A stretch of DNA of 64,000 nt from Hypanus sabinus (lineage: Eukaryota). The notes beneath the pieces are model-generated. The model saw only the letters and a program-made list of their open reading frames with translations, was not told where the DNA came from and made no database searches. The position numbers and the translations under genes are program-made. Location: the NCBI RefSeq assembly GCF_030144855.1, contig NC_082731.1:26226001-26290000 (forward strand), in the 5' to 3' direction. This document shows positions 21,321 to 64,000 of the stretch, one piece after another (the stretch's first letter is position 1; each line of letters begins with the position of its first letter).

Positions 21321-23077
21321 TGTCACTTTGAGCCGTAGCCTTCGGCTCACTGAATCTGCGTAGCCATAACCTATCCATTTACAATACGCTACTTTAATCT
21401 TTTTTTTTAATTCTCCTCGTTTTTTGTTTCATCAAGACACCCTGCTTCACATTCTATTATTTAATTAGACCCTGAAGTCAATATACTACGGTGAAATAAA
21501 CACTGACCTTCTTGGAAAATGGAAAAAAATCAGAGAGCACAGAGCAACCTACTTAATCACAAGGGTAACATACTAACGACACACCGACAGCACTGAAGGG
21601 TAGGATTGGAAACGGGTACCTGGTTCAGACAGACAGCAACTTCACCACCCACCTCAGGCTGAAGACATTTTCAAGGCTTCTAAAGTATTCAACTCTCTTG
21701 CTAAATTGAAAGTGAGTATACCACCATGAGATGCGCGCGGTAATGGGATGCCGTGGAAAGAGAACATAGTGAGACCCATAGACAGTGCAGATGACAAGTT
21801 GGGTGAAAGATCAAACACGCTAATGGTGCAAGGGGGAGTGTAGCTGTTGATCACGTGGCGAGAAATCAAGGTGCCACCTGGAGAAGGATTACTGATCAGT
21901 TAGTCAAGACGTCCTGTAGTAGCTGGGACTAGATAGAATTCAATTTGTACTCTGGTAGGGTCGCAAACAGGACTTTGGGACTAGAAACATTCGGTTAGCG
22001 AAGATAGGTACATTTAAAGCTGTTATTCTACAGTTGTTCCATACAAAATGTTATTGCACTGTCGAGCCATGAATAAAAATTTAAATCATCATCATATTAA
22101 ACACAACTCTATGGTCCTGTTTCCTCTTTATTTCCGACTCTCCCCGTTCCTCTCCATTTCTCTTACTTATTTATTTTTTCATCTACCTATATATTTATTG
22201 GTAAGTTTCCTTGTGTTATCTAGAGAATAATTATAAGAATAATTGCAGGTTGTTCTGACATGCAGAAATAAAATCAGAAATATTATTGACAAAAATTGCA
22301 AGTATGTTCCTGCATAAGTGCTGCCTCAGTATCGTTGATTATCTCCAGACACGGTCCTTTTTTTTTGTTTATTTCAGGTTTACAACATCGACTGATTTCT
22401 GCTTTTGGAGTACCATATCTAACTCAGCAGGCTGAAATTGGATGCAGGATAGATGTTGGCTGAGTCAACAGGGTGGAAACTGCTGCTCGCCAAAATCGTG
22501 TCATGAAACCTCATCGAAAGACAAAACAAATGTGTCTCTCGTTCAAGTCATCTGAGAGACGGTACCTCTGAAGATGCCATCATCACAGTCTACCGCCTCC
22601 TTGTGGTAGTGTAGTCTTCCTTCTGGACTGTATCAGTGCGCCCGCACATTCTTGGAGTCGGATTGGGGTATTCACAGTTCCCTGACGGAGAAAGAAGCGT
22701 GATTCACTGTGAAACGGACAACTGTGCGGCACTCAAGCTAAAACACGGCGCAAAAGACTTCAAAACTGCAGGGTCTAGTCTACAAATCAGCTGCCCATCC
22801 GATCAGTAATCCTGCGTTAGACCGGGACAATACTGAATATCTGCACTACCTTCGGAACTTTTTGTAATCATTGAGCGGACGGTTTAGATCTGTGGTTCAA
22901 GTGTCAGCCAGCTATTTTCAGGATCCCACCAGATCCCATGATCTGCCCCTCACCCCCTTCAAATACCTTTCTGTTTACATTTTTATAGTACAGAAGTTTG
23001 GACATCACGTGGAATTTTTAAATGGCCGTTGAGAGAGGGGGGAATACAGTGTTTTTCTCAGGGAGCTCACCACTGTA

Positions 23078-23141
23078 AATATAGCATCGGGTGGATGGAA
23101 GGTGAGCTTTGGCAGCGGAACAGTCCTGAAAGTCCAGACCA
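23078..23141 (+). CDS. TRAJ: TRAJ segment NIASGGWKVSFGSGTVLKVQT (5'-most J in window)
   Basis: RSS tgtttttct(23050)-12-cactgta; donor gtgagt. Heptamer ends gta, not gtg. Confidence 0.8.
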
Positions 23142-24078
23142 GTGAGTGGATTTTGTATTGTACACAGTATAGGTTAGAATCGGGAACGTTACCTACTAAT
23201 ACACTATCGCTTTTGAGAAAGAATCGGATAAATGTAGAATCATGTTCAAATTGCAGGTCTAGGACGAAAGGGTCAGGGTGTGGAATTCGAGAATTCCTTG
23301 CAAAGAGGTAGGTCAATGCTCTGTGCTGTAACTGTTACATGAAACTGAGTGGGAGGAAATAGGATACCAATTCCGACCATTCACAATCATAAGAATTCAC
23401 TTGTTTTCTTTCTTTCCCGTTTCTAACAAAAACTGCGTGTGGTGTCATAACCCTGTTTCTTTCCCCCATTGGTGCCAACTGGCCTGCTGCACGGATCCAG
23501 CATTATCCAGTATGTTCGAACAAAAGCATGTAATTCAGCAACTTAGCAGTGGGAAACTAACGGCTCATCCGAGTCAGTGAACATTTTGTTTGCCCTTTCG
23601 CTCTCTCGTGAAGTCATCGATTCGTATACCATATTGTCAATGCCGAATTCCCACCATCGACACGAATCCCATTTGCCTCCATTATAAACGTATCCTTCTA
23701 TACGATCTTTCAGCATCTAGTTTGGTGTTACTACTCTTCAGCGTAATAATTGTATGGGATTCCACGGCATTTTTATTCAACGTGTTCTAGATACTAACTA
23801 CACTCTATGTACTAAAACCTTCCATACAGCTCTGTGGAAGGAATAAATTGAAAGCGTTTGAATTGCCGATTTCCTCAGGTGAGTAAGCCTATGACTAATA
23901 ATCGCCGAAATTATATTTCATTCACCACTAAACACAATCACGATGATGAGCAAGCCAACGGGTTGAAAGACTTAGTGCCTGGAAATGAATGATCAACTCA
24001 CACGGCTGATGTGGAAAGGTACCACGCGGTAGATTCGAGGCACTGAATGGAGTTTTTGTAAGCTTCTTCCACACCGTG

Positions 24079-24144
24079 TGAATTACGGAGGAGCAAATGA
24101 CAAGTTAATCTTTGGAAAGGGGACGAAGGTATCAGTGGAACCCA
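24079..24144 (+). CDS. TRAJ: TRAJ segment NYGGANDKLIFGKGTKVSVEP
   Basis: RSS agtttttgt(24051)-12-caccgtg; donor gtaagt. Confidence 0.95.
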
Positions 24145-25539
24145 GTAAGTATGAACAAAAGCAACTAATGGCATTCAAGGCAAGTTCCAAAAGTTGTATT
24201 TACTTAGTGGCGTGCAAGAAATGTCCAAAAGTGATGTGAATTGGCTTGTTCTCGATGTTCTCGATTTAATGTCACCATTGATGCTGTAAATGGGGAATCG
24301 TATGTCACACGTTCCCCACAAATATCTACAATTTTGACACGGGCAGACAGCAAGGTACGAACAAAATGTCAAATAAAATATGAGCTCTGCGCATCACGAG
24401 ATACTATAATTGGTAACGAAAAGATTGGTTTCAAATAGCGACTTAAACGAGGAGTGTCTGCAAGATACGAGTCACTCAGGGAGAGTATTTCAGAGTTTGG
24501 GCTATCTGCAAAATTGGAAGTTTGTGAGGGCTGGTGACATAACCAATAATCGTGTATGGAAATAGATGTAATTGCCTCTATTGCCATCAATAATCTAATA
24601 ACTAAGTGTGTGGAATGTACGAGTTGATACAAATTTGGACAAAATGACGGTTCCGAAGTTGATCATTTTAAGTCAACGTCACCAACCATGGACTAAGGCC
24701 AGTACTTGAAAAAAAAGTAGATTGATGAATTGATTTACTGTTGAGACATTTTCCGAACTGAAATCGGAAATCGATTTTATATGCCATTCACCTATATTAA
24801 TCAATTATAACAATGCATTGAGTTGTAAAAGGTAACACAATAACAGATTTCAAGATTAAGTATTGCGATTACAGAAAAGATGCAGTGCAGGTAGACAATA
24901 AAGTGGAAGTTTATAATGAGGTATACGGGGGGTGTCAGGATTCCACGTTCTCGTAATAGAGAATCGTTCAACAGCTGTATAAAAACTGGATAGAAGCTAT
25001 CCTTGAGCCTTGACAACAACAACTTTGAGTCTTCCTCGTTTAGTTTAAATAACATTAGACGCTATGCAATAATTACCAGATTGACACACAGTGATATATT
25101 CCGTTGATCTGTATAATTGCGTCCACCGCCTATATTTCTAATTTCAGGATAACTACTTGGATTATATCTGAGAATTTTGACTATATATCTGCAGAAAAAT
25201 GTAAAACTAGATTATTCTAACTTCATGTATTTGTTGTTCATGGCTAAAAGAATATATGTGGTGTGTATCATTTATATGCTTGTATTTACATCTTAATATG
25301 TGTATCAAAATATAAGCGTGTTTGTGCATGGTATTTTTTCGTGTCTTTGTTTAAGTGTGGTAAGTAGTGTATGTGTGCCTGACAGATAGTGCCTTTACGT
25401 GCTTGTATCTGATTGCACGTGGGTATGCGTCCATGCTTGTGCGTGCCTAGGTAAGAAGAGATAGAGAATGAGAGAGGGTGGGTGACAAAGGTTGAGAAAG
25501 CGGAGGCAAAGCAAGAGGGGAGGAAAGAAAGAAATCGCA

Positions 25540-25542
<3 letters not shown>

Positions 25543-25580: not shown

Positions 25581-25582
<2 letters not shown>

Positions 25583-26031
25583 ATACATGCGTGAGAGGGT
25601 TCAAATACAGCCACGGAGTGGCTGAGTCCAGTTTCTTCGAAGATGAACTGAGCCCCTACCCTACTCATGGGACATGTGCGGACCACTTAGCAGGGTCAAT
25701 GTCCAGACATTCCTAATACTGGTCGGGTAAGATTAATGCCTGTTTACTTACCTGAGCAAACAGTTCATCTTATTCATATATTTCTAATTGTTGTGGAAGG
25801 GGGTTGTAAGGGACAAAATTGAAAATATATGCAAAGATCTAGGTGAAGGTTTTTTAAGAGAATTGAGCTCGAAATCAGATGAAGTGAAGTAGCCGGATAA
25901 AGTTATAATGCATCGAAACTGCAATTGTCAAAGGAACAGGAGTCAGGAAGTCATCGAGGTGCTAAGGAAAACGCTTGTTCGCCCGATTAAGTAATCATAA
26001 CAAGGTTTCTGCAATGTCATCTAAGGCTGTG

Positions 26032-26097
26032 TGAGTGGATCTGGAATAGGGTATCGTCTAATCTTCGGAACTGGGACTAAACTAACTGTTGAGTCGA
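26032..26097 (+). CDS. TRAJ: TRAJ segment SGSGIGYRLIFGTGTKLTVES
   Basis: RSS ggtttctgc(26004)-12-ggctgtg; donor gtgagt. Confidence 0.92.
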
Positions 26098-26467
26098 GTG
26101 AGTATTGTAAGGGTTCGTTTGTGCTTTTGACCAGAGTAGGGATTTCTGTAAAGTAACTCTTTCCTGCAACATCTGGGTTATTTTGCGAAATATTTCATTA
26201 TTAGTTATATGCGTTTCAGTTCGCCGAGTGAGCCCTACATCAGGGAGTAACGATCTTACCGCCGGCTTTAGAACATAAGTACAGAAGTCTAGGTTGATAT
26301 TTTAGACCTGGTGCGTTTTATTGTCAGAGGTATTGAATTTACACAGCCTGAGCCGTGTCATCAAAATATGGATTATAACGATTGCTCGGGATTACGTGGT
26401 TGTCCAGTGTTACCTGTGTGTTGGTGCAGAGAGGACTGTAGTTTTTGTTTGAGGGTGCCATGTTGTG

Positions 26468-26529
26468 GATAACCTCAGGCAACACAAAGCTCATCTTTGG
26501 CAAAGGGACCAAACTGACGGTGGAGCCAA
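26468..26529 (+). CDS. TRAJ: TRAJ segment ITSGNTKLIFGKGTKLTVEP
   Basis: RSS agtttttgt(26440)-12-tgttgtg; donor gtgagt. Confidence 0.93.
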
Positions 26530-27712: not shown

Positions 27713-28277
27713 GTACTCATATTAATGTTTTATATAAAATCTAACATTGCTCTGTACAGCCAAGTTTTAAAATACGTCAGCCTCATTAAATATTGTTTAA
27801 AAGTTGATAGTTAATTTCGGTTAACTGTGGACATTGATAGAGCCTCGTAGCCTTCTATCTTTGTCAGTCTCGAGAGCGAATGACACAGGCAGAGAGTTCC
27901 AAGCTTCAGAAATGGAGTCCGGGTGAAATATAAAGCAACAATGGTTTTGTCATTTTAGGAAAGTTTATAAGCTATAATACATCACGAAGATTGGCATGTA
28001 AATGGCACAGGCTGGTTCCGATCCTGAATTAAATGACTTCATTAATGAAAACAATACTGAACTGATCCAAATAACAGCCTCAAACAACTGTGCTACAGCA
28101 GTTATTATATGTTAGTGCAAGAGCTCAGAGGTTATATCTATGGCTGGCATTTATCATCTCAAGCTTAAATAAAAAGCTTCGATATGGATTAAAGATGACC
28201 TGTACCCACCCAGACAACGTCAATCGGTCATGGAGGAAGAACGATCACGGTTTTTTTCCTGAGGATATTTCACTGTG

Positions 28278-28340
28278 TTTACTACGAAACATGGAGCAAG
28301 CTCAATTTTGGAGCAGGAACCCGTCTGATCGTGACTGCAG
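28278..28340 (+). CDS. TRAJ: TRAJ segment YYETWSKLNFGAGTRLIVTA
   Basis: RSS gtttttttc(28250)-12-cactgtg; donor gtaagt. Confidence 0.93.
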
Positions 28341-29360
28341 GTAAGTCTCCTGGCGACTTATAGTGTCAGCAGAAAAGAATTTGTACCGGGTTTCCAACTT
28401 GAATCCAAATCCTAAGCAGTTGCTAACTGTACCGGTGCTGCCTGATTGCTTCCGCGAGCTAATTTTCGGTGCCCTTTGTCGGTCTGGTTTGAACATACTC
28501 ATTCTGACTGTGTGGTATTCATTCCAGTGCTCCTTTTACTGTTTCAACAGGTTTATTGGCCACTGTACACTACCTTTAATACGCATGGGAAATAATATCA
28601 GGCAGATGTACGTTGAAAGAACCAAATGGAATATAAATGGGGTTAGATTAAATTACTTCTTTTGGTTGCCGTGAACGCAACGCATCGGATGACCGATTTG
28701 TGTGTCGATGAGGCAACGCTAATGAATGGTCTCTGGCCGAATCGCCAACTGTTCATGTTCCTCCAATAATATTGCCTCACCTCATAAGTTCCTCCAAAAT
28801 TTGAGTGTCTGTGTGTGTGTCGTGTAGGCCAGTGGTACACTTTTGTGAAGGTGACACAAATCACTGGCAAAAAAAAATTCTTCAGTTAGCTCCAGTCAGC
28901 AACGGAGGGGGCGGGGAGGAAATCCAAACAGATTGCAGGAATAATTCTCACAGAGAGTTGTTGGAAATGATTGGAAGAGAGACTACGAACTGAATGGGGG
29001 AGGAGAGTTTGGTGGCATCAAGAACAGCAAGTAATCTTCTTTGCATTTGAAAAGTATTGAATGACCATTTCATATCCCTCATCTTTAAAGTCCCAGGGTT
29101 AGAATGGTGGAACAGATGACTAACGTTCTCAGAATCACAGTCAGTTGACGTACTTTATTTGTTTTAGACAGAGTAGAACGAAGGCCATTCTTCTTTAGCG
29201 CAATTTTCTATCATTCTAAGATCATTATTGGACAACAGTTCTCTATTCTAACAAGCTCCTGGCTGTAGATTTCGTCGTTCAGCCCCTGATAGCATTGCGC
29301 CCACGTGTGGTGTGCAGTGAGGGGGCGGGAGTAGTTTTTGCCTGGATGTTTCTCGCTGTG

Positions 29361-29423
29361 TGTATATGGCAGGGTTAGATAAGTTTCTGTTTGGATCTGG
29401 GACTAAACTCACTGTGATACCAA
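29361..29423 (+). CDS. TRAJ: TRAJ segment YMAGLDKFLFGSGTKLTVIP
   Basis: RSS agtttttgc(29333)-12-cgctgtg; donor gtaagt. Confidence 0.94.
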
Positions 29424-31237
29424 GTAAGTACTTCCATCTCCCCGACACTACATCTGCAGCTGGTTTTTAGATTTCCGCATTCAACACAAAGCCGTAAGGA
29501 AATATGTGGCACGATTGGGCGTACTGGCTTAAAGGTCCAAGGCTTCACATATAGGGATCCATTGCAGTTAGAGTCAGAATTCACCAAAGCTTGAAGTTGT
29601 GTTTATATATGTAGAAATACTGAATGGACACAAGAAAATCGAAAGCTGGCCGTTCCGCCTATTAGGTCCATGTGGCTCTGAAGGGTGCTATCCTATCAGT
29701 CCTATTTCATTCTTCATGATTTTCCCAACCTTACCACCTCCGCTTTGATAGTTAATTGCACTGGAGGGTAATTTATAATTATTCGGATGCATGTCTTGGG
29801 AATGTTGGGGGAAACGGGGCACCTGAGAGAAAACCAGGAAGAACGAGTAAACTTCACCCGGTTAGTGTGCAGTTAGTTCTGCTCCACACAGTTAGTATTC
29901 TGTGTGTGTGGAGTTAATGACTGAACCCGCCCTTCTAACGCTCTGAGTTGCTAAACTACTAGACGATAGCTCTGTCGCGTTACAGTTAGATGTTTTGTTT
30001 GAGAAATTATTAAAACTATGTACAGTAATACATCTGTGAGATTTCCTATTTCCGGAAGGAAGGGGAATCTAATTTTGTGGGAGGGAAGGTTGAGAGTAGT
30101 CTCAATCTGAATTTTAGTACTGCAAAGGATTGAAACGGGTTTCTCGAGTGTAATTCATGGGAGTTATGGACAGGAAAGTGAAAGGTAAACTAAGATGTAT
30201 TGTTGTGATGAGATTATGTAAGATGGCTGTTTAGCGACTGAAGTCGAAGTGCTTAATTGGAATCTGTCTCCTTTTCCTGGGATGTAAGTGCTTTACAATA
30301 CTTAGGCATAGTTCATGGGATACTCTTAAGCAATAGTTTTGGCCAGGGATGCCTGCATGGTGACTGAAACTCTCCTTCAATGTTAACTGATATCATGTCC
30401 GCTTCCTGTGAAAACTTTTGCTCAGAAAGATTCATTAATCCTCTTTCTGGAAGTCCCTGCAAATCTCTGAGGCAAGCACTAAGGCTTAGAATCAGTTCTC
30501 GTCGACAACTTGGCTTGAACTTTGAGAGCAAATGTGCGTGTTGTGTGGTAGGAAAGAAAGGGCTTTGTTGAGCTGGAAAATAAAATTGCTAAGTTCCATG
30601 GGTCTCCTTTGCAAAATCGACTCTCGGGTTATAAATGAAAACTCTCTAGATTGGGTTTGGGGAAGGAATCTGCCTATTTCTAAAATTAAGCAGGTGATTC
30701 TCTATTGTTGTATAGCTTCTTCATATTACAATAAAAGACATTTTAATTAAGGCGATCAAGTCTAATATTCATCCCATCTGCATTTGACATTTTTCTCTTC
30801 ACACTTGTTGATTCTGCCTGTGTACACTTCGCTAATCCCTGTTGTGGCCCTTGCAGTTACCCTACAGGTAATCTGGGTTCCTCTAACATACTGAAATATA
30901 AATTGTAAACCACTATTTCGCGCAAGAAAGGGGCAAGAGGATCAAGGGAAACGACTGGATTCAGGTTAGAAACAGAAATTTAACGAGCAAGTGGAAAAAA
31001 TATGAAGGACTTTTTCATAAAAAAGCAAGTTGTGTGGTTCTAATAGCGTTGCTGCTCTTGGAGTCAACATTCAATTAATGATCCGAATAGCCTTCCCGCC
31101 CTGTGATGCTATAAGCCAGTCCCAATTGTGCATACTCTTTACCGGTTCGCCGTACAGCTGTCACCATTTTGCAGTTAACACCCTTCACCACTGCTCATTG
31201 GAACAAGTGAGTTATTGTCCAGGTGAGTGTCAACGTG

Positions 31238-31303
31238 TGGGTAATGTTGGAAGCTCTGGAAAGTTGATATTCGCTCCAGGAACGAAACTAACTGTGATAG
31301 CCA
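31238..31303 (+). CDS. TRAJ: TRAJ segment GNVGSSGKLIFAPGTKLTVIA (FAPG variant)
   Basis: RSS agttattgt(31210)-12-caacgtg; donor gtaagt. Confidence 0.85.
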
Positions 31304-31730
31304 GTAAGTTCCTTAACATGCACGTCCTTGTGTACAATTCACGGGCATGATGTTGTAGGTTTTTTTTAGCAATCGTAAATAAAGCGAACTTGTAATCTCC
31401 TAGGACAATTCTGCTGAAGAATGCGTTAAGATAGTGATGAGTGAATATTACAGGACCTGGGGGAACTATAGTCTTTTTTTTCAGTATATTCCTTTTAATT
31501 CGTATGTTTTTTCGCAGCTTCGGAACTTATCTAACATCATGTAAAAATGTCCATCCGGATTTAATTCTTGCTCAAAGCTACTAAATATTCAAAGTTTCAA
31601 CATGCCAGAGTAGATAGCGCATTGACGAAAAGTAACAGGCATACAGTAATAACATGCAGACTGCACATTGCCCCACCTCAAATAATGCGTTTGAGTACTC
31701 TGGGTTTTTGTTAAGGCATAGTCTACTGTG

Positions 31731-31795
31731 TGATTATGGAAGCACGCAAGGAAAGTTAATATTTGGAGAAGGAACCCGCATAATCGTGGTACCCA
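31731..31795 (+). CDS. TRAJ: TRAJ segment DYGSTQGKLIFGEGTRIIVVP
   Basis: RSS ggtttttgt(31703)-12-tactgtg; donor gtaagt. Confidence 0.95.
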
Positions 31796-32982: not shown

Positions 32983-33282
32983 GTAAATATAATCCCGCAG
33001 AATTGAAGAGACTATAGAGAGAATAAAATGGGTTCTATGAAGGATGAATGCACCGAGGTACTTGATACTCTATGCGGAATCGATGGACAGAATAACGTGG
33101 TTCCGCGGTACTGGATTATAATTCTAAAAAGGAGTTAAGAGTTTCCCTAAGTTCGTGGAGGGGAGAAAGTAGACCAGGAAGAAGATAGCGAGTTTCGAAT
33201 TTGTGAGACAATTTAGTATGGCAGAAGAAGACAGTTTCAGTGTCAGGTCTGACTGCAAAACGTTTTTGTGATGGATAACGTG

Positions 33283-33341
33283 TGAATACAGCAGTGATGA
33301 GTTGATATTTGGCATCGGAACCAAACAGACTGTAGAACTCA
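33283..33341 (+). pseudogene. TRAJ EYSSDELIFGIGTKQTVEL with RSS spacer shortened to 6 bp
   Basis: cgtttttgt(33261)-gatgga-taacgtg; open frame and donor gtaagt intact. Paralog of 38429. Confidence 0.8.
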
Positions 33342-44592: not shown

Positions 44593-44604
44593 ATTAATGC
44601 TGTG

Positions 44605-50728: not shown

Positions 50729-51581
50729 GTAAGTATTTTAAGCAGATTTTGTAAATCTTATTGCAGAGGTGACAAAGATGGGATCTGGTTCCCAGTGCTT
50801 TAAATCTGTCGTGAAAATCTGCATAAGGTATAATAGTCAGCAGCAAAAAAAAATGAACTGCAGATACTGAAAATGGGTGCATAAAGGCGCAGGTGAAGGT
50901 TTCAGGAAGATGATGGGAATGTAGGGCGAATAGAATGGAATTCCTGTAGGTTTATGTAAATGAGTTGTTGACGGACTCGCTTGGCTGAAGGGCCAACTTT
51001 CCATGCTTCACAGATCTGTGAATCTGACCTGCAACATGTGTGTAATATGTTCTGTTTTGCAACAAGTCGTTCGAGATAGTCAGCGCCAAAAATAAGTTAT
51101 TCGGCTCCTTGCATTAAGTATAACACCTAGAAGTAGTGTCACTTTACTCTTGGAGTAGCAGCAGTCTTTTAATGCTTAATTAACAGCTGGGTGTTTTTAT
51201 TTCAGCGTCCAGCGTATAATCTAAAGTCAAATTACCTCATATACAAGGAGTCCTATGTATCTATCTGATCACTTTCAAGAAATAATATATGTATCTGAAA
51301 AGTAAAAGAAGTGCTGTACTTAATCACAAGAACAGCAAAATAATCTTTTCTTTGATTATGTCTGTGAAGTCAATACTGCAGAGCCGCGAGATTAAAGAAT
51401 GCAGCTTGTTCAGCTGTACTAAAATGACTGAAACGCAGAAAATTGAGCTGATAGTGATCATCTTCGAGAGAAATCGGTTATTATACGAAAAGGAGGTAGG
51501 CAATCAAATTGTAAAGAACTAAGATGGCAGTTCCAGAACCAAAATAAACGTGTCGTTTTTGTACCGGGGATTACCACTGTG

Positions 51582-51641
51582 TGGATGCTGGTGATAGGAA
51601 GCTAATATTCGGGTCAGGGACGAGATTAACAGTGACGCCAA
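51582..51641 (+). CDS. TRAJ: TRAJ segment DAGDRKLIFGSGTRLTVTP
   Basis: RSS cgtttttgt(51554)-12-cactgtg; donor gtaagt. Confidence 0.96.
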
Positions 51642-52654: not shown

Positions 52655-52781
52655 TTTTGCCAAAACAACCGAAAATGGGCCCTTGGCAATAATATCTACC
52701 ATTTCTCCGGGTGATATATCCATAGGCTGTATATAGTTTAATATAATGCTTCCGGGATTTGTGCTATCGGACAGGACGTAG

Positions 52782-52839
52782 TAGGTTATCAATAGCAAAT
52801 TGAATTTTGGGAAAAGGACAATATTAATCGTATAATCAA
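52782..52839 (+). pseudogene. Probable pseudo-TRAJ (*VINSKLNFGKRTILIV*S)
   Basis: gggatttgt(52754)-12-gacgtag; ttt ggg aaa agg aca ata tta atc gta taa; no GT donor. Confidence 0.55.
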
Positions 52840-53562
52840 TTACATATGACGAATGGATGCATTCCATTATGGAATGGGCACGACACAAAACTATCTAATT
52901 CTATGCATTGAGAATCGTTTTTGCTGGCATTGGAATTCACTATCTAAAGGACTTTAAATTTATCAATATGTGTGGATTTACCCACCATAATGCAAGCCAT
53001 GAAATCCAATCCAGCGGTAGGCAAACGAATTTAGGAAATAGATTGAGTTTAAACCGCTGCTGTATTTCCATTTTTTCCGCATTTAATTGTGTACTGAATG
53101 AATGCAACGGTGAAGTGTTGATAAGTATGCATAAGAATCAGGCCCGGTCATCAGAATTGGAATGGAGCGGCTGCTAGAGCTCTTGTCTCACAACTCCAGA
53201 TCAGGGGTTTTATCTACGCTGACCTCTAGTGCTGTCTTTATGGAGTTTATAACTTATCCTTATGACCGTGTGGGATTCCTGCCGTTCCCTGATGTGTTAT
53301 TAGGTGATAAGGGTTAATAGGTTAATTGGTCCTGTGACTGCAAACATTAGGAAGTTGATGGTAAAATATTGTAACAGATAAGAACAGACAGATGGAGGAA
53401 ACCTTCACTAATTATGTAATAAATGCAGAAGTTCTGAAAATGTTCCACATACCAGGTACAGCTTGTGGAGAAAAAAAACAGGGCTTAAATTATCTCTGTT
53501 ACAAAACACAAAACATTTCATACAGTTGCCCGGGAGTTTTTGAGCGCCATATTGCCACTGTG

Positions 53563-53619
53563 CGAATGATGGTTATACCCTCAAATTTGGATCTGGAACA
53601 AAGCTATCTGTTATTCCGA
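53563..53619 (+). CDS. TRAJ: TRAJ segment NDGYTLKFGSGTKLSVIP
   Basis: RSS agtttttga(53535)-12-cactgtg; donor gtaagt. Confidence 0.95.
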
Positions 53620-53995: not shown

Positions 53996-53996
53996 T

Positions 53997-54203: not shown

Positions 54204-55049
54204 TCCCTCAATAAACAGAGATTATTTACTTCGACTTAGACTCAGGCTTAAACTTTTCTTTGGAGTGAAACAGACTATGTAGTAACCTTTACAATCATGG
54301 ATGGACAGATAGCTCCAGCATTTCCTTCAGAGTCATTGAGTCTGAACTCAAAGGCATTGGTTTAAACAGATCCTTAATAGGGAGATGCGGGGCAAGGTTT
54401 TCAGGTGCTGAGTATGTGGAATATGCTGTTGACTAAATGATGGAATCTGCATAATAATGGTGCCTAAAAAAACACTTGGACAGGTACTTGGTTGGGAAAC
54501 GTCTGGAGGGGAGGGATGGTATTAAAGCAAAAAGTAAAGGCAAGTAGGATGAGAAAAGAAATGCATCTTGGTCGGCATAGACGTATTTGGACGAAGTACC
54601 TTATCTGTTCTGCTATTTAATAAGATTGCTCAAATCCTCTTCCTACCTTTCCCACTACCCTTCATTTTTCTAAAATATAAATCCACGCTTGTAAATATGA
54701 TCAAAGATTCAGCCTCTACAGCCGTTCAGCGGACAGAATTCCAAAAGTACATAACCCTGACAGTGAAGGTATTTCTCTTGAATCCAATCTCAAATTGAAG
54801 ACCACTAAAACCCTTCAATCCATCAATCCATCAATCCATCACCATTAGTTGTGTGATGGTCCGAAGAAGTATTTTGAGAGTTGGTGCCCATTTGGATTTC
54901 GGCCAGAAATGTCGACCGTACTCTCTTCCATAGATGCAGCATGGCCGACTGGGTTCTTCCACCATTTTGCATGTGTCGCCCATTTATAGGACTTTATAGT
55001 TTGTTGTTCACCCCTGACACTGGTTTTTGTTAGCCTCTCACACACTGTG

Positions 55050-55112
55050 GGTGAATGATGTTTGGATACACGCTCATATTTGGATCTGGTACCAAACTCA
55101 CTGTTCAACCAA
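55050..55112 (+). CDS. TRAJ: TRAJ segment (*)MMFGYTLIFGSGTKLTVQP; in-frame stop at the 5' tip, usable only after trimming
   Basis: RSS ggtttttgt(55022)-12-cactgtg (consensus); TGA at 55052-55054; donor gtacgt. Confidence 0.8.
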
Positions 55113-55388
55113 GTACGTATCAGACAAATTACCTGAGCTATTGTTGAAGGGCTTGGATGTGTTTTAAATAGCTGTCATGTGTGTTGTAATGATGTAAAAT
55201 AAGGTAAAATAAGCATGTGATTGATACCATCATCTATACTTATTAATAAGACCATAAGATATAGAAACAGAATTCGACTTTGTTACATCTACGCTTTTTG
55301 CTGTTTTATCGGAATGCGACAATGAGTTGATTATGCACGAATGGCCAGAAGGAAGTGAGAGGTTTGTGTTTGGGGATATGGCACTGTG

Positions 55389-55451
55389 TGACTTATGGCA
55401 ACACCAACGTTTTAACTTTTGGAACTGGGACACGCCTAACTGTACAGCCCA
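55389..55451 (+). CDS. TRAJ: TRAJ segment TYGNTNVLTFGTGTRLTVQP
   Basis: RSS ggtttgtgt(55361)-12-cactgtg; donor gtaagt. Confidence 0.95.
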
Positions 55452-56654
55452 GTAAGTCTTATTTTGTCCTTTTAACAGCACGGAACGAGAATGTTAGCAC
55501 ATCGCCTTAGATTAATGTAATCATCACGGACGATTACAAGATAATCATGTCCATGAATTAACGTATTTGGAATCTTTGGGATAATTCTTTTTAGCTCAAA
55601 GCGAGGACAAAACAAAAATGTTGTAATTTTATTTAGAACACGAAGAGGTGACGTATCTAGCGATGGGATGCAAAAGGGTGCAGGGTTATAGGGGCTTCGG
55701 GTATATGCTGATGGTAACACGGTAGTGTAAGGAGGCGTCGGATGGAAATGCAGGTGATACTGCAGAAAATTGTGCAGTTCTTTTGTAGGACGTTGGTTTG
55801 GCCACAACTGGAGCATTCTATCTATTTCTGGCAGCTAAACTTTCAAAGCGATTGGGACGAGAAGGGACAAGGGAATGGGAGGGTGTCCATAGGCCGAAGG
55901 ATAGAATGGGTTAATCTGGCGTGATTCCGCTCGGAAAAGATAAGGCGCGGGGGGACATGAGATAATTGTCCATTGAAGTTAATGGCAGGCAGAGGAAGGA
56001 AAGAACACTCCAATTGGCAGAAGCGTCGAGATTGAGATCACGAGCCAGGAAGAATTTATGCAACGAGAAGTGTTGGTCTACAGCTTAGTGAAGGGATTTG
56101 GGAGCACATTCCACCGTAGTTTTCATAGGCCATGTAGATTTCTACGTGTGGCGGTGCGGAAAGGATGTAGATGGATAAGGAATGGAGCAAGGGATGAAAG
56201 TATTTGACTTTGATTTTACAGAAAAGGTCTTCACCGGATAAAAGTGCCGATTAACCCCAAAATGCACTTTTTGAGCTTTCTCTGTAATCAAAGAACATGC
56301 CAAAGCGGAGTTGCCGCTGTCAATCAGATCTTCCTTAATACAGGATAAACTGCTATCAATTAACATTTAACAGTTGGGAATAATTTAATGTGTAATAGAT
56401 TCATACAATTTAGAGCTTTCGCATTCATTGCATATTTCTAAGAGGCTTGACCAGGAGTTTACTCCGTGCATATATTCAGAAACATATTTGCTAATCAGAA
56501 ATAAGATACATTTGTTATTATACATTGCCGGAAAAAATGAGATTTTAGATACTTTGAACAGTCATTTACAGCTCTTGTAATGTAGTCCTGCATTCAGAGA
56601 TGGCAGTGTAACGTCTGACTAGCAAATATTTTGTTACTGGGATTTCATGCTGTG

Positions 56655-56711
56655 TGAACCCTGCCAACAACATCATCTTTGGATCTGGCACGAGGCTTCG
56701 TGTTATGCCTA
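56655..56711 (+). CDS. TRAJ: TRAJ segment NPANNIIFGSGTRLRVMP
   Basis: RSS tattttgtt(56627, weak)-12-tgctgtg; donor gtaaag. Confidence 0.82.
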
Positions 56712-57052: not shown

Positions 57053-57955
57053 CTCTCTCTTAGAATGAAAGAGACTGTGTGAGAAACTTATAGCTGATAA
57101 TATCACGATAGGGGCATGGATAGGGTAAAAACTTGCAGTCCTTCTCTCATGGTCATGGAGTCTGACCTTAGAGCTATTGGTTTATCTGGAGAAGAGAGAA
57201 ATTTAATGGGGAGCTGAGGGATAATGTGTTCAGGTGGTTAGAATATGGAATGAGCTGCCAGAGTAAGAGGTAGAGATGGCACAATTATGATATGTGAAAA
57301 AAATAGTTGGAAAGTTACTTGGCGGGAAAAGATCAGGAGGGGCGATTGTAGACAAAAAAAAATCAAGCACAAACCGAGTTAGCACAGAAATGCATCCTGG
57401 TCGGCGTGGTCGAGTTGGTCCGAAGTGTCTGTTTGCATGTTGTTTTACTGCATGGATCGGATACAACTGCAATCCACTTAACAAACCATACTGCAAACTC
57501 CTTTGACTATGCAAAGGGTTCGGTTAGGAAGCACAACAGACGAAATGTAGCTGGAAGCCAGTGCCATTAACCTTCAACAATATTCCTTTTAATAGTGGTC
57601 CGAAAGGGAAATAGAGCCTCAGGAACAAAGGCAGGGAGAGCCCATTGAGCCCCTCCAGTTTGTTAAATCGATTAAATCAACTTCCTATCTTTATTTTGAT
57701 TTCCTTAAAGTATAAATCCACTTTTGTGTATGCGATCGGCGCTTCACCATCCACAGCCGTTCAGCGAAGAGAATTCTAAATATATATCAGCCTGGGAGTG
57801 AAGATATTTCTCTTCAATTCAATGCCAAATGGACAAGCACTGATGGCGAGAATGTCCCAAAAGTTCTTTTGAGGGCTGTTGCCCATTTATAAAAGACTTT
57901 GTAGTATGCTGCTTACCTCTGACAAGTGGTTTTTGTCAACCCCTCACGCACTGTG

Positions 57956-58017
57956 GGCGAATGTTGGTGGATACACGCTCATATTTGGATCTGGTACCAA
58001 ACTCACTGTTAAACCAA
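57956..58017 (+). CDS. TRAJ: TRAJ segment ANVGGYTLIFGSGTKLTVKP
   Basis: RSS ggtttttgt(57928)-12-cactgtg; donor gtaggt. Confidence 0.95.
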
Positions 58018-58311
58018 GTAGGTGTGAGAAAATATACCTGGGCTATTCGCGAAGGATGTAGATTTGTTTTAAATGGCTGTCATGTACATTGTACTGATGT
58101 AACAGAAGATGAAATAAGATGCGATCAATACCGTCATAATAATGCCACAAGATATAGAAACAGAATTGTGCCATTCGGCCCATCGACTCATTGTTTGTCC
58201 GTTTTGCTATCTACGCTTTTTGCTGTTTTATCTAAGTGCTTCAACGAGTTGATTATGTAGGAATGGTCAGAATGAAGTGGAGGGGTTTGTGTTTGGGGAT
58301 ACAGCACTGTG

Positions 58312-58374
58312 TGGCTTATGACAGCACGAACGTTTTAACCTTTGGAACTGGGACACGTCTAACTGTGCAGCCCA
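58312..58374 (+). CDS. TRAJ: TRAJ segment AYDSTNVLTFGTGTRLTVQP
   Basis: RSS ggtttgtgt(58284)-12-cactgtg; donor gtaagt. Confidence 0.95.
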
Positions 58375-59598
58375 GTAAGTCTTCTCATAGAACAGAAGGA
58401 AGCCATTGATATATCATATGTTAAATTGATGAGATTATCGTAAACGATTACAAGATAATCACATACGTAAATTTAGCCATTGGGATAATCTTTGCGATAA
58501 TTCTTTATGACTGTGAGCGAGGACTGACTAACGAGGATGTGCTTTTATTTGGAGAACAAAGAGGCGACGTGACAGGACGAGGAGACATAAAAGGGTGGGG
58601 ATCAATGGGGAATCGACTATATGCTGGTAACAGGATAGCGTGAGAAAGCATCGGATGAAAATGCAGGGGATCCTGCAGAAAATTATGCAGCACTTTCTAA
58701 GTATACTAGTTTGGCCACAACTGGAGCACTGTATCCATTTTTGACCCCGATCTTTCGAAGCATCTGGACTTAGAAGAGTAGTGGGAAGTGTTTCCTTGGA
58801 TCGAGGGATAGAATGGGTAAATCTGGTGTCATTCCGGCCAGAAACGTCGACAGTACTCTTTTCCATACGAAAAGACAAGTAAAGGAAGGACATGAGATAG
58901 GTGTTCATTGTAGTTAGTGGTAGGCAATTGAAAAGGTAACCAATCCCATTGTCAGAAGGGATAACGAGATTGAGACACAGATGTGAAGTCATTAGCCAGG
59001 GAGAATTGACGATCGAGATGTCATAGTCTACAACTCAGTCAAGGAGACTTAGATGCAAATTCCACCGTTACTTTCATAGGGGATGTTGATTTCTTCGTGT
59101 AGATGTACGTATAGACGCATAAAGAAGGGGTCAGGGGATAGAAAGTGTTTGATAATAAGAAAAATTCCTTCACAAGCTAAAAATGCCAATTATCCTCAGA
59201 TAATCATACTCTTTGAGGTTTCTCAGTAATCAAAAAACATGCTTAGGTTGTGTCGCTTCTGCGATACAGAGCTTCCTTAACACAGCATAAACTGACGTCA
59301 ATTAACATTTAACAGTTGGGAATAATTAAATATGTAATAGATTCATGCAATTTAGACAATGTGTAGTCATTGAATGTTTCTGATCAGTTTGGCCAAGAGT
59401 TAACTCAGAGCATATATTCAGAAACAAATTTGCTAATCAGGAATAAATTACATTTCATTATTATACATCACTGGGGAAAATGAAATTTTGGGCTACTTTC
59501 GACAGAAGCTCACAGCTGTTGTAATGTAGTCCTGCATTCAGAGCTGGCAGTGTAACGTCTGGCCCGCAAGGGATTTGGTACTGGGATTTCATGCTGTG

Positions 59599-59655
59599 TG
59601 AACATTGGTAACAACATCATCTTTGGATCTGGCACAAGGCTCCATATTACGCCTA
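59599..59655 (+). CDS. TRAJ: TRAJ segment NIGNNIIFGSGTRLHITP
   Basis: RSS ggatttggt(59571)-12-tgctgtg; donor gtaagt. Confidence 0.9.
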
Positions 59656-60087: not shown

Positions 60088-61121
60088 ATGAAAGCATTAG
60101 TAGACTTCTAAAACAAAATCATTTGTTCTTTAAACTTCAAATCCATAATCAGACTATTTGATGGAAAGCAGCAGAATGTTGCTTATCTCCCCGAAATGTA
60201 AGGATTCGTTCTATCTAAATACCTTTTAAACATATTCATAACTTCTTGTGCAGCTCCTTCCATAAATACACTATCACTCGGTTTTTGAAATATTTGCTTA
60301 ACAAGTGCTCTTTATGTCTTTTCCTTCTCACCTTCAACCTATACTATCCAGTATTAGACTCCCCTACATGACTGTTCACTTTGTCGATGCTACTCGTCGT
60401 TTTATATGCATCTATATGGCATCCCAAATCTTCCTGCGCTCCAACAAATGAAGCTCAATTTGTCCATTCTTTCTTGCAACTCAAGTTCTCCGGTCCCTGT
60501 AATGTCCGTGCAAATCTTTTCGGCCACTCTTAACAACTTAATTGCCATTCTCTTCCTAGGGCAGTATTTGCCTGATCTGCTTTAGCAATCATCTTCTCTT
60601 CTGAGTTCATTCTCCATATGCTTCATTTCCAGGTCTTTCAAACAGTTAATTCCATCTTCTCTCACTGTACTCAGTAATCTGGTGGCCACAGCTCTTTGTT
60701 GCAGTGATTTCCAAGGAGCTTTATGGCGAGCCATTCGCTTTCGTGGTCGTCATTGCCAAGATGATCTTACCGTTTTCATTTTAAAGTGACATTCTTGAAT
60801 ATCAATCACAAACCACTATGGTTAAATTTCATATTCAAGTCCTTGGATAATTGCTCCAGAATATCGATTGCTTGTTCATTAACAAGGATTACACTATCAT
60901 GTGCCACTTTACAATTAATAATGAATAGGCCAAGTATGGGTTTTGAACCAATATATCTTTCAAAGTAATTAATAAGTATTGGTTAGCATTCCTTTGAAAC
61001 TGAGCGTTCTATGGATAATTCCATTGAATGTTTCCAAACACTCAGATATAGCAACCAATAGGTGTAGTTATCTACTAATTCTGGCCTAGTGAGAGTTTTT
61101 GGTTTGGGGTATAGTACTGTG

Positions 61122-61184
61122 TGAATGCGGGAGCTAATAGCAAACTTATCTTTGGAACTGGGACTAAGTTATCTGTGTTGCTAA
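61122..61184 (+). CDS. TRAJ: TRAJ segment NAGANSKLIFGTGTKLSVLL
   Basis: RSS agtttttgg(61094)-12-tactgtg; donor gtgagt. Confidence 0.94.
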
Positions 61185-62123
61185 GTGAGTATTAATTAAC
61201 ATTTAACCTGAGTCTATTTCCTACAAGTGTATAGAAGTTCAATTTCTCGATATCCATACATTGTGTACTTTAGTTTCCTGTTATATTTAATGAGTCTGAA
61301 TTGAGTTGGTTATGAGTACTCAGGGCAATGGCAGAACCGTTAATTTCCTAAAACTTAATATGTTTGTAGAGTTAAAGAAATATTAGTAGAATTTGGATTA
61401 CAGGAAAATAAATGCAATGAGAATGAAAGGTCTGTTTTCAGGGCCGGTGTGGTCTTTTGGTAAGGAAATTGCAGAAATATGATAACATCTACTCTTCTGA
61501 AAAAAACAGTCCGATAACATGTGTTATCGAACAATCTAGTGTACTGAAACATGAGCTTGTCATTGGGCCAGTAACTGGCGATTATGTTCGTCGATTCAGG
61601 GACAGGAAATTAGATCTTAGGAGCACCTGGACAATTCCATTCTCGCCTTTTAGAAATACGGCCATCTTAAAGTAACTTCTTTTCACACTTTTCGTTTCTT
61701 ATGAAGGCTCTTAGAACAGATCCATCTACTCTGTTTCTCTTTCCACATATGCTACCTGGCCTAACGAGTGACTTTAGCATTTCCTGTTATATTAGATCCA
61801 AGAAAATGTTGTTAGAGCTTTGACTCAAATAGCGAAGGGTGCTGGAAGTTTTCAATAATTTTAGAAAGTATGACAAATCTCAGCAATTCTAACCAGCATT
61901 CAGCATGAAAGAAAATCTAAATCAAAATTTCAGTTCACCAAGATTTTCCTGAAGATTTGACAGTTCAGAATTCATGGCAAGGAAAGTGGAAGATCAGTTC
62001 CTTCTCTGCTACAAAATACTATAACACTAGCATGCATTTTTAGTTAAATAAGTGAAATCTAAACTGGTAAGAATGGGCTAGCTTAACTGAGAATGGGTTT
62101 ATGTTATGGCATGGCTTACTGTG

Positions 62124-62180
62124 TGGACTATGGACAGATACTCTCATTTGGTACAGGGAGCAAGCTGACAGTTTTACCAA
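62124..62180 (+). CDS. TRAJ: TRAJ segment DYGQILSFGTGSKLTVLP
   Basis: RSS ggtttatgt(62096)-12-tactgtg; donor gtaagt. Confidence 0.94.
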
Positions 62181-62345
62181 GTAAGTTCAATGACATCCTT
62201 AATCCGATTAACCAGTACTTTAGGATATTACTTTCAAAATCTGAATTCCTGTTTGTTATCTTTAAATCTTTGAAAACTCATGTTTTGCAAATGAACTGCA
62301 TGCTTAGGATCAAATGGGGTTTCTGTACTGATGCGTAACACTGTG

Positions 62346-62402
62346 CTTTTGCTGGCAACGAGATAATATTTGGATATGGGACCAAACTCACCGTACAACC
62401 AG
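62346..62402 (+). CDS. TRAJ: TRAJ segment FAGNEIIFGYGTKLTVQP
   Basis: RSS ggtttctgt(62318)-12-cactgtg; donor gtaagt. Confidence 0.95.
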
Positions 62403-63039
62403 GTAAGTGCGGTGATGCCAGACTCTGGAGTCCTCTGTTCATAACTATCGTGAGATTGTTAGAATTAAAACAGTAAATAGTTTCCCAGGTCCTCTGTAGA
62501 GGAAGTCCTCCTTTAGAAACAGGATAGCTGAATGATAATCTAATAAAGAAAATCCCTGATTATATAGACATTATGAAAGGCAGATCAGAAGATCAGAAGA
62601 TCTCTCTGATTTTGAGGAAGAACAAAATTAGACCTCATCTAAATGAGGTTGTCTAATAGATTCCATTCATTATAGCATTCTATGCATAAGGAGGAGATAT
62701 AAAGCAGATGTATGTCAGATTTAGCCGAGATACCTCGTGGGAAATTCAAGCAAGACCTGTATGAAGGAATATTTAGAGAGGTACAAAAGGGAGGAAGTAC
62801 AGGCAAGTTGGATTCTCAATTAGATCAATTGACGGAAAGAAGAGACGACAATTCTAAGTGTTAAGATGCAGGTAAGGAAGGGGGAGAAAAAATAGATAGA
62901 CTTGACCTAAATGCTCTATAGTTTAGAACAAAGGGAGGGCATCATCTTTGAAGCTACCTCACTGGGGTGGACCGTGGTGTATGTTCTCTTGGTTGAGGAA
63001 TCAAGAACCATGCGTCACAAAGCCACAATAAGGGGTATG

Positions 63040-63290
63040 ACTGGGATATGCAGCATTTCTTTCGTTTGCAGGAAGTGAATCTTTGGAATTCTCTAACCAG
63101 ATCGGAGAACTGTGAAGGCTGAGACATTAATTTCATTCAAAACGGCGTAGGCTGGTATTTGGATTCATGATAATAGGTGGGATCGAGGGATATGAAGTTA
63201 ATGAGTAATAATATCTGTCATGATCTTGAAGATTGGAGAGCAGGAAAAAAGGTCGAAGGGCCCAGCTCCTATTGTCTTGCTAAAGGTTCA
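63040..63290 (+). mobile_element. CR1 3' end fragment (similar short pieces at about 42.1-42.3, 43.1-43.3, 54.4-54.6 and 57.1-57.4 kb)
   Basis: tttgcaggaagtgaatctttggaattctctaaccaga...aaggtcgaagggcccagctcctattg. Confidence 0.6.
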
Positions 63291-63619
63291 GGACGTCGGA
63301 TTGCCATCAGGACTGGTGGTGAAATAAAGGGAAAACAAGTATTGGGATTCTATATGTAGGGGAGCGGAAGGTGGAGTACTTTAGAAGAAGCAGGACAACT
63401 GAATGGTGGTGACCACCGTGTGAGTAGCAGAGGCAGAACTGAAAGAGAAGGAAATTAGAAAATAATTTTGCATCAAAATGGGCTGCAGGAATTATATCAT
63501 TGAAATCATCCAACGCATTAAAAAAAAACAAAAAAAGAACAAAAGCGGACCTTCCCTTAGTGTGTATTGGAAGAAATAAAGTTATTCAATGGATTTTTGT
63601 TTGAGGGTATGATGGTGTG

Positions 63620-63679
63620 TGAATGATAACACCGGCAGGCTGACATTTGGATCTGGAACAAGGCTTAAAGTTCAACCCA
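63620..63679 (+). CDS. TRAJ: TRAJ segment NDNTGRLTFGSGTRLKVQP
   Basis: RSS gatttttgt(63592)-12-tggtgtg; donor gtgagt. Confidence 0.92.
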
Positions 63680-64000
63680 GTGAGTGGTTTAACATCTCCT
63701 CGCTTTTTTGCATAACCTTTTAAACTGTGTGCAACACAATTTATTTTTAAAAACAAAAGGTGTTTTCAATCTCATTGTCAATCTTACCATAATCAATGAG
63801 TAAACTAAAGTGGTTTTTCATATGTGTTGCTTGTAGAAAAATATATAACTAAATTGAACTTCTCTCGGAATGTGTAACATTCTTCACTAATGTGATAAGG
63901 GTTTCCAAATTCATGAATGGTAGTTGAGATTTAAACTGCCCGAATGAGTAATACGACCCAATTATTCTGAGGCTCTTAAATGCTTTGTTATATCCCCTGC

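What the first reader, a model, noticed from the sequence alone, without database searches (positions are those of the whole stretch)
23050..63685. A hidden 40-kb TCR-alpha J array with at least 33 usable segments
Seen: 33 units of nonamer, exactly 12 bp, heptamer, 57-66 nt coding, FGxG/FAxG and GT donor, all on the + strand and spaced about 0.2-3 kb apart. The ORF track does not identify them because J segments are tiny. Known: a long D-less array of 12-RSS Js is the TRA architecture, which supports successive V-J revision, and nurse shark TCR-alpha also undergoes somatic hypermutation. Inference: a mammal-scale J-alpha array in a chondrichthyan, probably unannotated and extending past the window.
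Basis: partly seen in the sequence, partly recalled or inferred. Interest (0 to 1): 0.8.

Follow-up and report, generated by a model that had tools for sequence, protein, structure and literature searches.

The report
TCR-alpha J-segment array of a ray
This stretch is the start and first 40 kb of the joining-segment (J) array of a T-cell receptor alpha gene in a cartilaginous fish, apparently a ray or skate; it is real and well preserved, but arrays of this size are already published for sharks, so it is an ordinary new member of a known kind.

Summary
A script finds 33 plus-strand units at 23050-63679. Each has a nonamer, a 12-bp spacer, a heptamer, 57-66 nt of coding sequence with FGxG or FAxG, and a GT donor 34 nt after the Phe codon. 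There are none on the minus strand and none in 200 shuffles.

A weight-matrix scan adds one intact J coding region whose signal has only a 6-bp spacer, plus five decayed J relics. Two of the 33 are doubtful: J1 has the heptamer CACTGTA and J24 has an in-frame TGA as its first codon.

The three assembly gaps all lie between Js, at least 172 nt from any unit. No frame depends on them, but spacing and count are minimum estimates.

The alpha reading is well supported. Coding lengths fall in the 57/60/63/66-nt classes (29 of 33), and 25 of 33 start with TG. These match the published fish J-alpha signature and the bamboo-shark TRAJ classes. There are no V, D or C exons in 64 kb. Js and their signals are better conserved than their flanks between old duplicated cassettes.

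TRAC and TRDC lie outside the window, and no T-cell transcripts were found.

Sharks are already known to have 63-156 J-alpha. Only the batoid case seems unreported in the papers I could search.

The parts
23050..23141 (+). J1: 12-bp signal plus 64-nt coding, FGSG, ends VQT; doubtful (heptamer CACTGTA, out of phase)
24051..24144 (+). J2: 12-bp signal plus 66 nt, ..DKLIFGKGTKVSVEP
26004..26097 (+). J3: 66 nt, FGTG
26440..26529 (+). J4: 62 nt (out of phase), FGKG
28250..28340 (+). J5: 63 nt, FGAG
29333..29423 (+). J6: 63 nt, FGSG
31210..31303 (+). J7: 66 nt, FAPG
31703..31795 (+). J8: 65 nt (out of phase), FGEG, consensus nonamer
33261..33341 (+). Extra J coding region (59 nt, FGIG, GTAAGT donor) whose signal has only a 6-bp spacer; probably cannot recombine
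34715..34808 (+). J9: 66 nt, FGSG; copy A of the 2.37-kb cassette
36063..36152 (+). J relic: heptamer CGATAGT, donor GT changed to GA (TPLIFGAGSKL..)
37090..37183 (+). J10: 66 nt, FGSG; cassette copy B
38401..38491 (+). J11: 63 nt, FGVG
39462..39555 (+). J12: 66 nt, FGSG; cassette copy C
40086..40175 (+). J relic: good 12-bp signal (17.7 bits), but FG motif and donor lost
40845..40890 (+). J relic: SIG*G with a stop in the motif, no signal
41476..41566 (+). J13: 63 nt, FGSG, consensus nonamer
42538..42631 (+). J14: 66 nt, FGSG
43534..43624 (+). J15: 63 nt, FGGG
44577..44664 (+). J16: 60 nt, FGPG; its nonamer lies in a perfect 27-bp tandem duplication
45377..45467 (+). J17: 63 nt, FGRG
46915..46999 (+). 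J18: 57 nt, FGSG
47860..47947 (+). J19: 60 nt, FAAG
48301..48395 (+). J relic: good 12-bp signal (18.3 bits) and FGRG, then a shifted frame and no donor
49564..49651 (+). J20: 60 nt, FGRG
50635..50728 (+). J21: 66 nt, FGQG
51554..51641 (+). J22: 60 nt, FGSG
52754..52839 (+). J relic: FGKR, no donor, 100 nt to the right of gap 1
53535..53619 (+). J23: 57 nt, FGSG
55022..55112 (+). J24: 63 nt, FGSG, perfect signal, but TGA as first full codon; usable only after trimming
55361..55451 (+). J25: 63 nt, FGTG
56627..56711 (+). J26: 57 nt, FGSG, weak nonamer, donor GTAAAG
57928..58017 (+). J27: 62 nt (out of phase), FGSG; paralogue of J24
58284..58374 (+). J28: 63 nt, FGTG; paralogue of J25
59571..59655 (+). 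J29: 57 nt, FGSG; paralogue of J26
61094..61184 (+). J30: 63 nt, FGTG
62096..62180 (+). J31: 57 nt, FGTG
62318..62402 (+). J32: 57 nt, FGYG
63592..63679 (+). J33: 60 nt, FGSG; last J before the window ends

Best explanation
This is the 5' boundary and first ~40 kb of the germline J-alpha (TRAJ) array of the TCR alpha/delta locus of a cartilaginous fish, said to be a batoid by the scan's own notes.

Shown by the sequence: 33 J exons, each preceded by a recombination signal with a 12-bp spacer and followed by a phase-1 GT splice donor. All point the same way, and the array was partly built by tandem duplication of 2.4-kb and 2.9-kb multi-J cassettes.

Inferred from established V(D)J biology:

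- In thymocytes RAG1/RAG2 joins an upstream V segment (23-bp spacer signal) directly to one of these Js, with no D segment, deleting the DNA between them, including the delta gene.
- The VJ exon is then spliced from the J donor to the alpha constant exon further downstream.
- The long one-way array lets a cell replace a failed or unselectable VJ join with a new join between a more upstream V and a more downstream J.
- The fixed position of the signal relative to the frame (coding lengths 57/60/63/66 nt) and the conserved TG(AAT) start are the fish-type signature proposed to steer microhomology-directed, mostly in-frame joins (Giorgetti et al. 2023).
For: - There are 33 composite units on + and 0 on -, with 0 in 200 shuffles.
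- The FGxG-to-donor distance is 34 nt in 33 of 33 units. This is the J-alpha criterion of PMC10322711.
- Coding lengths are 57 (6 units), 60 (5), 63 (10) and 66 (8) nt, so 29 of 33 are in the same phase. Twenty-five of 33 start with TG, with consensus TGAAT.
- Annotated bamboo-shark TRAJ have signal positions mostly at -60/-63/-66/-69, the same classes.
- The density of one J per 1.23 kb compares with about 0.9-1.1 kb in catshark, nurse, zebra and epaulette sharks.
- No V-end, TRAC or TRDC peptide signature occurs anywhere in the 64 kb.
- Between paralogous cassette copies the Js and their signals are 84-93% identical, against 54-65% for the rest. An exception is the J11-family position of the 2.37-kb cassette, whose other two copies are decayed; it scores only 61% (signal) and 76% (coding). 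Overall this suggests selection on the Js and signals.
- A DNA run of a related organism carries the region at about 96% identity.
- Unverified scan notes place a TRDC gene 51 kb upstream and alpha/delta V arrays 1.5-5 Mb upstream on the same piece.
Against: - The alpha constant gene is not in the window, so no J is shown to splice to it.
- No RNA run holding these Js was found.
- J shape alone does not separate alpha from delta Js. J2 (DKLIFGKGTKVSVEP) looks delta-like from memory.
- The TRDC position comes from an unchecked note.
- Six J-derived units are dead or lack a usable signal, and two of the 33 are doubtful, so part of the array is decaying.
Confidence: 0.9

Rival explanations
1. The Js, or the first few of them, serve TCR delta or a second delta-like constant gene rather than alpha.
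For: Delta and alpha Js share the 12-bp signal, the 34-nt FGxG-to-donor distance and the ..VxP ending (my knowledge of mammalian TRDJ, not tested here). J1 and J2 are atypical or delta-like. A scan note reports an alpha/delta-like constant gene on another piece of the assembly.
Against: No vertebrate delta locus I know of has tens of Js. No D-type segment and no constant exon occurs in the 64 kb. The phase and TG signature match published J-alpha. The noted TRDC lies upstream, not downstream (unverified).
Confidence: 0.04
2. The array belongs to a beta, gamma or immunoglobulin locus.
For: FGxG Js with a 12-bp signal also occur in beta, gamma and light-chain loci. IgH genes are linked to the alpha/delta locus in elasmobranchs (PMC12227049).
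Against: Cartilaginous-fish Ig genes are V-(D)-J-C miniclusters with the J next to its own V and C, and none is present here. Beta, gamma and light-chain Js have, from my knowledge of the human genes, 31 nt rather than 34 nt from FGxG to the donor, and they sit in small groups next to D or C.
Confidence: 0.02
3. The count is inflated by misassembly (collapsed or duplicated haplotypes around the three gaps), or the array is a disused relic.
For: There are three assembly gaps in the last 12 kb, two at similar offsets behind the third J of each 2.9-kb cassette copy. Six dead J-derived units exist. No transcripts were found.
Against: Cassette copies are only about 80-84% identical in their best-conserved repeat blocks and encode different J peptides, so they are old duplications, not assembly doubles. 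Thirty-three units keep signal, frame and donor together. Js and signals are far better conserved than their flanks. The absence of RNA reflects the lack of suitable lymphoid runs, not silence.
Confidence: 0.04

Closest known systems
Shark TRAJ arrays (Giorgetti et al. 2023, Nature 619:193, PMC10322711): catshark 66 Js in 59 kb, nurse shark 63 in 72 kb, zebra shark 73 in 64 kb, epaulette shark 156 in 138 kb, bamboo shark 139 annotated
   Same: One-way array at about 1-kb spacing. 12-bp signal. 34 nt from FGxG to the donor. Signal positions in classes three bases apart (coding 57/60/63/66 nt). TG at the first two coding bases.
   Different: This appears to be a batoid; the two batoids in that survey (sawfish, thorny skate) are listed NA. 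The share of Js in the primordial phase is 0.88, against 0.92-0.97 in sharks, which is not significant (p about 0.1). The first five coding bases are more variable: 5.55 bits or 3.85 nats, against 2.3-2.8 in an unstated unit. Only part of the array is in the window.
Mammalian TRAJ array (human: 61 Js in about 70 kb between TRDC and TRAC; from my own knowledge)
   Same: Scale, density, one orientation, 12-bp signals, FGxGTxLxVxP core, a mix of functional and defective Js, and a weak first J next to the delta side.
   Different: In mammals the position of the signal relative to the frame varies (share 0.52-0.75) and the 5' ends are diverse. Here the fish-type fixed phase and TG start are kept.
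Teleost TRAJ arrays (zebrafish: 134 of 137 Js in one phase; PMC10322711)
   Same: Fixed phase, length classes three bases apart, TG start, 34-nt rule.
   Different: Teleost arrays are denser (for example 45 Js in 33 kb) and more uniform at the 5' end.
TRDJ segments
   Same: 12-bp signal, similar J core and length.
   Different: TRDJ segments are few (one to a handful), lie upstream of TRDC and are paired with D segments. Here there are at least 33 Js, no D or C, and the array reportedly lies downstream of TRDC.

Membership tests
TCR alpha J (TRAJ) array | Each J is preceded by a nonamer, 12-bp spacer and heptamer signal | tested here: met
   33 of 33 units. Heptamer positions 5-7 are GTG in 32 of 33. 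Nonamer T-run is conserved. Weight-matrix scores are 16-31 bits.
TCR alpha J (TRAJ) array | FGxG tetrad with 34 nt from its first base to the intron donor (criterion of PMC10322711) | tested here: met
   33 of 33 (31 FGxG, 2 FAxG). GT donor in phase 1.
TCR alpha J (TRAJ) array | Tens of Js in one orientation, about 1 kb apart, with no D, V or C between them | tested here: met
   33 Js in 40.6 kb on +, none on -. No V-end, TRAC or TRDC signatures in 64 kb.
TCR alpha J (TRAJ) array | Fish-type fixed signal phase and TG start (cartilaginous, basal and teleost fishes) | tested here: met
   29 of 33 units have coding of 57/60/63/66 nt. 25 of 33 start TG. These are the same classes as bamboo-shark TRAJ.
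TCR alpha J (TRAJ) array | Canonical order 5'-TRDC-(TRAJ)n-TRAC-3' | not testable with these tools
   Neither constant gene is in the window. An unverified scan note puts TRDC 51 kb upstream. Nothing is known downstream.
TCR alpha J (TRAJ) array | Rearranged V-J transcripts spliced to the alpha constant region | tested here: inconclusive
   No RNA holder was found. Three small possible-RNA runs of a related organism covered only a repeat at 46.0-46.4 kb.
TCR beta / gamma / Ig light-chain J | 31 nt from FGxG to the donor, and small J groups beside D or C (human genes, from my own knowledge) | tested here: not met
   The distance is 34 nt in all 33, and no D or C is in the window.
Cartilaginous-fish Ig minicluster | V-(D)-J-C cassette with one J beside its own V and C (PMC12227049) | tested here: not met
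   No V or C signature in 64 kb, and Js follow Js.

The most novel reading that the evidence does not exclude
This may be the first resolved J-alpha region of a batoid. Compared with sharks it may have partly loosened the germline signature that makes fish alpha-chain junctions predictable. Only 88% of its Js are in the primordial phase, and the first five coding bases are more variable than reported for sharks. That would mean rays moved towards a less germline-determined alpha repertoire independently of tetrapods.
Probability: 0.12. Interest if true: 0.4.

Novelty: new member of a known kind. Interest (0 to 1): 0.25.

Why it matters
The result gives a clean, coordinate-level germline list of 33 Js, one signal-defective J and five relics. 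It also fixes the 5' boundary of the J-alpha array for a batoid. In the one broad survey I could read, batoid J-alpha regions were not scored. Such a list is needed as a reference for repertoire sequencing in rays and skates, and it allows the published microhomology model of alpha-chain assembly to be tested in the second elasmobranch lineage. It does not change the picture: large J-alpha arrays are already accepted as a shared feature of jawed vertebrates, sharks included.

Tried and rejected
- **Transcript evidence.** Both run searches found no RNA holder. Laying three small possible-RNA runs and one DNA run on 41400-47100 showed RNA-run contigs only on a high-copy repeat at 46.0-46.4 kb. 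The DNA run covered the region at about 96% identity. This neither supports nor counts against expression.
- **Constant or V exons in the window.** A six-frame signature search for the TRAC pattern (CLxTD followed by F or xF), the TRDC pattern (CLxxxFxP), V-domain ends and C-domain motifs gave only chance or transposon hits.
- **Rfam.** No family matched at gathering score.
- **Scan notes.** Nothing turned up near the window, by words for a downstream alpha constant gene, or for DAD1.
- **Literature on batoid alpha loci.** No paper in the held library gives a J-alpha count for a ray or skate. One search was wasted because 'TRAJ' matched 'trajectory'.
- **Looser phase than sharks.** 29 of 33 against about 0.945 gives p = 0.11, so no claim is made.
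- **Entropy comparison with the published table.** This is left open because the table's unit is not stated.
- **Protein database search with J peptides.** Not attempted. Js are too short for the length window of that tool, and joining them would have meant typing a long artificial sequence.
- **Assembly-double explanation of the cassettes.** Rejected, because the copies are only 79-84% identical.


Full report
**Observation**

The window is 64 kb at 42% G+C, with three runs of N at 52455-52654, 56884-57052 and 59874-60087.

Two independent scripts were run. One was anchored on the recombination signal. The other was anchored on the peptide core and then asked for a signal upstream and a GT donor downstream. 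Both recover the same 33 units on the + strand between 23050 and 63679, and none on the - strand.

Each unit has:

- a T-rich nonamer (consensus GGTTTTTGT);
- exactly 12 bp of spacer;
- a heptamer (consensus CACTGTG; its last three bases are GTG in 32 of 33);
- 57-66 nt of open coding sequence carrying FGxG (31 units) or FAxG (2 units);
- a GT donor, mostly GTAAGT, exactly 34 nt after the first base of the Phe codon.

A strict composite pattern finds 31 units on +, 0 on - and 0 in 200 Markov shuffles.

**Assembly gaps**

None of the three gaps touches a unit. They lie between J22 and J23, J26 and J27, and J29 and J30, and the nearest unit is 172 nt away. No reading frame depends on continuity across a gap. 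What the gaps do leave open is the true spacing, and whether a further J is hidden in one. The count is therefore a minimum. I did not try to fill them.

A weight matrix built from the 33 units finds six more J-derived elements, all on +:

- 33261-33341: an intact coding region (FGIG, GTAAGT donor) whose signal has only 6 bp between nonamer and heptamer, so it probably cannot recombine.
- 36063-36152: heptamer and donor both mutated.
- 40086-40175: good signal, FG motif lost.
- 40845-40890: a stop inside the motif.
- 48301-48395: good signal and FGRG, then a shifted frame and no donor.
- 52754-52839: FGKR and no donor.

Among the 33, two are doubtful. J1 has the heptamer CACTGTA, 64 nt of coding sequence and an atypical ending. 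J24 has TGA as its first full codon. About 31 units are therefore clean.

**How the array was built**

Two tandem cassette families are present:

- a 2.37-kb unit in three copies at 33.2-40.3 kb, each holding a 'TPLIFG'-type and an 'NKLIFGSGTKLTVTP'-type J;
- a 2.92-kb unit in two copies at 55.0-56.9 and 57.9-59.9 kb, each holding three Js.

In their best-conserved repeat blocks the copies are mostly 79-84% identical, and they encode different J peptides. They are old duplications, not assembly doubles.

Within the aligned cassettes the Js and their signals are 84-93% identical, while the remaining columns are 54-65% identical. The exception is the J11-family position of the 2.37-kb cassette, whose other two copies are the decayed units listed above; there the signal is 61% and the coding 76% identical. 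This contrast is what selection on signal plus coding sequence would give.

**Which receptor chain**

The window holds no V, D or constant exon. A six-frame search for V-domain ends, C-domain motifs and the published exon-1 signatures of TRAC and TRDC gave only chance or transposon hits. The chain therefore has to be inferred from four lines of evidence.

1. Giorgetti et al. 2023 (PMC10322711) identified J-alpha in 302 genomes by the rule that FGxG to the intron donor is 34 nt. All 33 units obey it.
2. That paper describes a fish-type signature. The signal sits at a fixed phase relative to the J frame, giving length classes three bases apart, and the coding sequence starts with TG. Here 29 of 33 units have 57, 60, 63 or 66 nt, and 25 of 33 start with TG, with consensus TGAAT.
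3. The 139 TRAJ annotated in the bamboo shark have signal positions mostly at -60, -63, -66 and -69 counted from the donor T. These correspond exactly to coding lengths of 57, 60, 63 and 66 nt.
4. Only alpha loci are known to hold tens of Js in one run. Cartilaginous-fish Ig genes are V-(D)-J-C miniclusters (PMC12227049). Beta, gamma and light-chain Js have, from my knowledge of the human genes, 31 nt from FGxG to the donor.

Unverified notes of this scan add that the same piece of this genome carries:

- an intact TRDC gene 51 kb before the window;
- IgW-like V genes 107 kb before it;
- alpha/delta V arrays 1.5-5 Mb before it.

They also describe the genome as that of a stingray or skate-like fish. 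This fits the canonical TRDC-(TRAJ)n-TRAC order, but I could not check it.

**Expression**

No public RNA run holding these Js was found. I laid three small possible-RNA runs and one DNA run of a related organism on 41400-47100. The RNA-run contigs lay only on a high-copy repeat at about 46030-46430. The DNA run covered almost the whole stretch at about 96% identity. The array is thus present in a relative, but use of the Js is not shown.

**Mechanism**

Shown: the sequence anatomy described above.

Inferred from established V(D)J biology:

- RAG joins an upstream V (23-bp spacer signal) to a J (12-bp spacer signal) without a D segment.
- The join deletes the DNA between them, including the delta gene.
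- The J donor then splices to TRAC.
- The long one-way array permits successive replacement joins.
- The fixed phase and TG start are proposed to favour in-frame joins directed by microhomology (PMC10322711).

**Comparison and novelty**

Large J-alpha arrays in cartilaginous fish are already on record:

| Species | J-alpha count | Span |
|---|---|---|
| Catshark | 66 | 59 kb |
| Nurse shark | 63 | 72 kb |
| Zebra shark | 73 | 64 kb |
| Epaulette shark | 156 | 138 kb |
| Bamboo shark | 139 annotated | not given |

Ott et al. 2018 state that sharks, like all gnathostomes, have many J-alpha (PMC5931798). A stingray alpha/delta locus has been mapped at chromosome scale (PMC12227049).

In the 2023 survey the two batoids (sawfish, thorny skate) and the elephant shark are listed NA. 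I found no paper in the held library that gives a J-alpha count for a ray or skate. The finding is therefore a new member of a known kind. It is useful as a reference but not surprising.

**Open point**

The share of Js in the primordial phase is 0.88, below the 0.92-0.97 of sharks, but not significantly so (p = 0.11). [quoted passage not shown] Sharks score 2.3-2.8 in a table whose unit is not stated. This could mean a looser junction-directing signature in batoids. It could equally reflect the partial array and a difference in method.

**Verdict**

Interest is low to moderate.

Noticed in passing
window 1574-5794 (- strand): An LTR retrotransposon whose two 217-nt LTRs are 100% identical. 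It has an open gag (241 aa, DUF7041) and an open pol (1065 aa: RT, RNase H, integrase). It looks like a very recent insertion. It is 52% G+C, against 42% for its surroundings.
   Followed up: partly
window 7171-8829 (- strand): An open 552-aa reverse-transcriptase ORF of LINE type (Pfam RVT_1 only). More broken RT fragments lie at about 12.6-13.9 kb and 19.9-20.2 kb.
   Followed up: partly
window 46030-46430: A high-copy interspersed repeat between J17 and J18. Its summed contig depth reaches 283,000 in a DNA run of a related organism. It is the only part of 41.4-47.1 kb seen in three possible-RNA runs.
   Followed up: no
window 44539-44594: A perfect 27-bp tandem duplication (2.1 copies) that doubles the nonamer of J16. 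It places a second nonamer-like site 39 bp before the heptamer.
   Followed up: no
window 23001-64000: The DNA between the Js has a G-over-C skew of +0.086 on the J-coding strand, with the J units themselves left out. The skew is -0.01 in the 14 kb upstream. It starts where the array starts, and its cause is unknown.
   Followed up: partly
window 56884-57052 and 59874-60087: Two assembly gaps sit at similar offsets (172 and 218 nt) behind the third J of each copy of the 2.9-kb cassette. This suggests that a shared hard-to-assemble element was duplicated with the cassette.
   Followed up: no
window 9000-23000: No J, V or C exon lies between the transposon-rich start of the window and J1. The 5' edge of the array is therefore inside the window. 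Any germline promoter upstream of J1, such as the mammalian TEA element, would lie here but could not be tested without RNA.
   Followed up: no
window 48955-49034: A perfect (TC)40 microsatellite lies between a J relic and J20. There are also (GT)19 at 25543-25581 and (AT)17 at 41028-41062.
   Followed up: no
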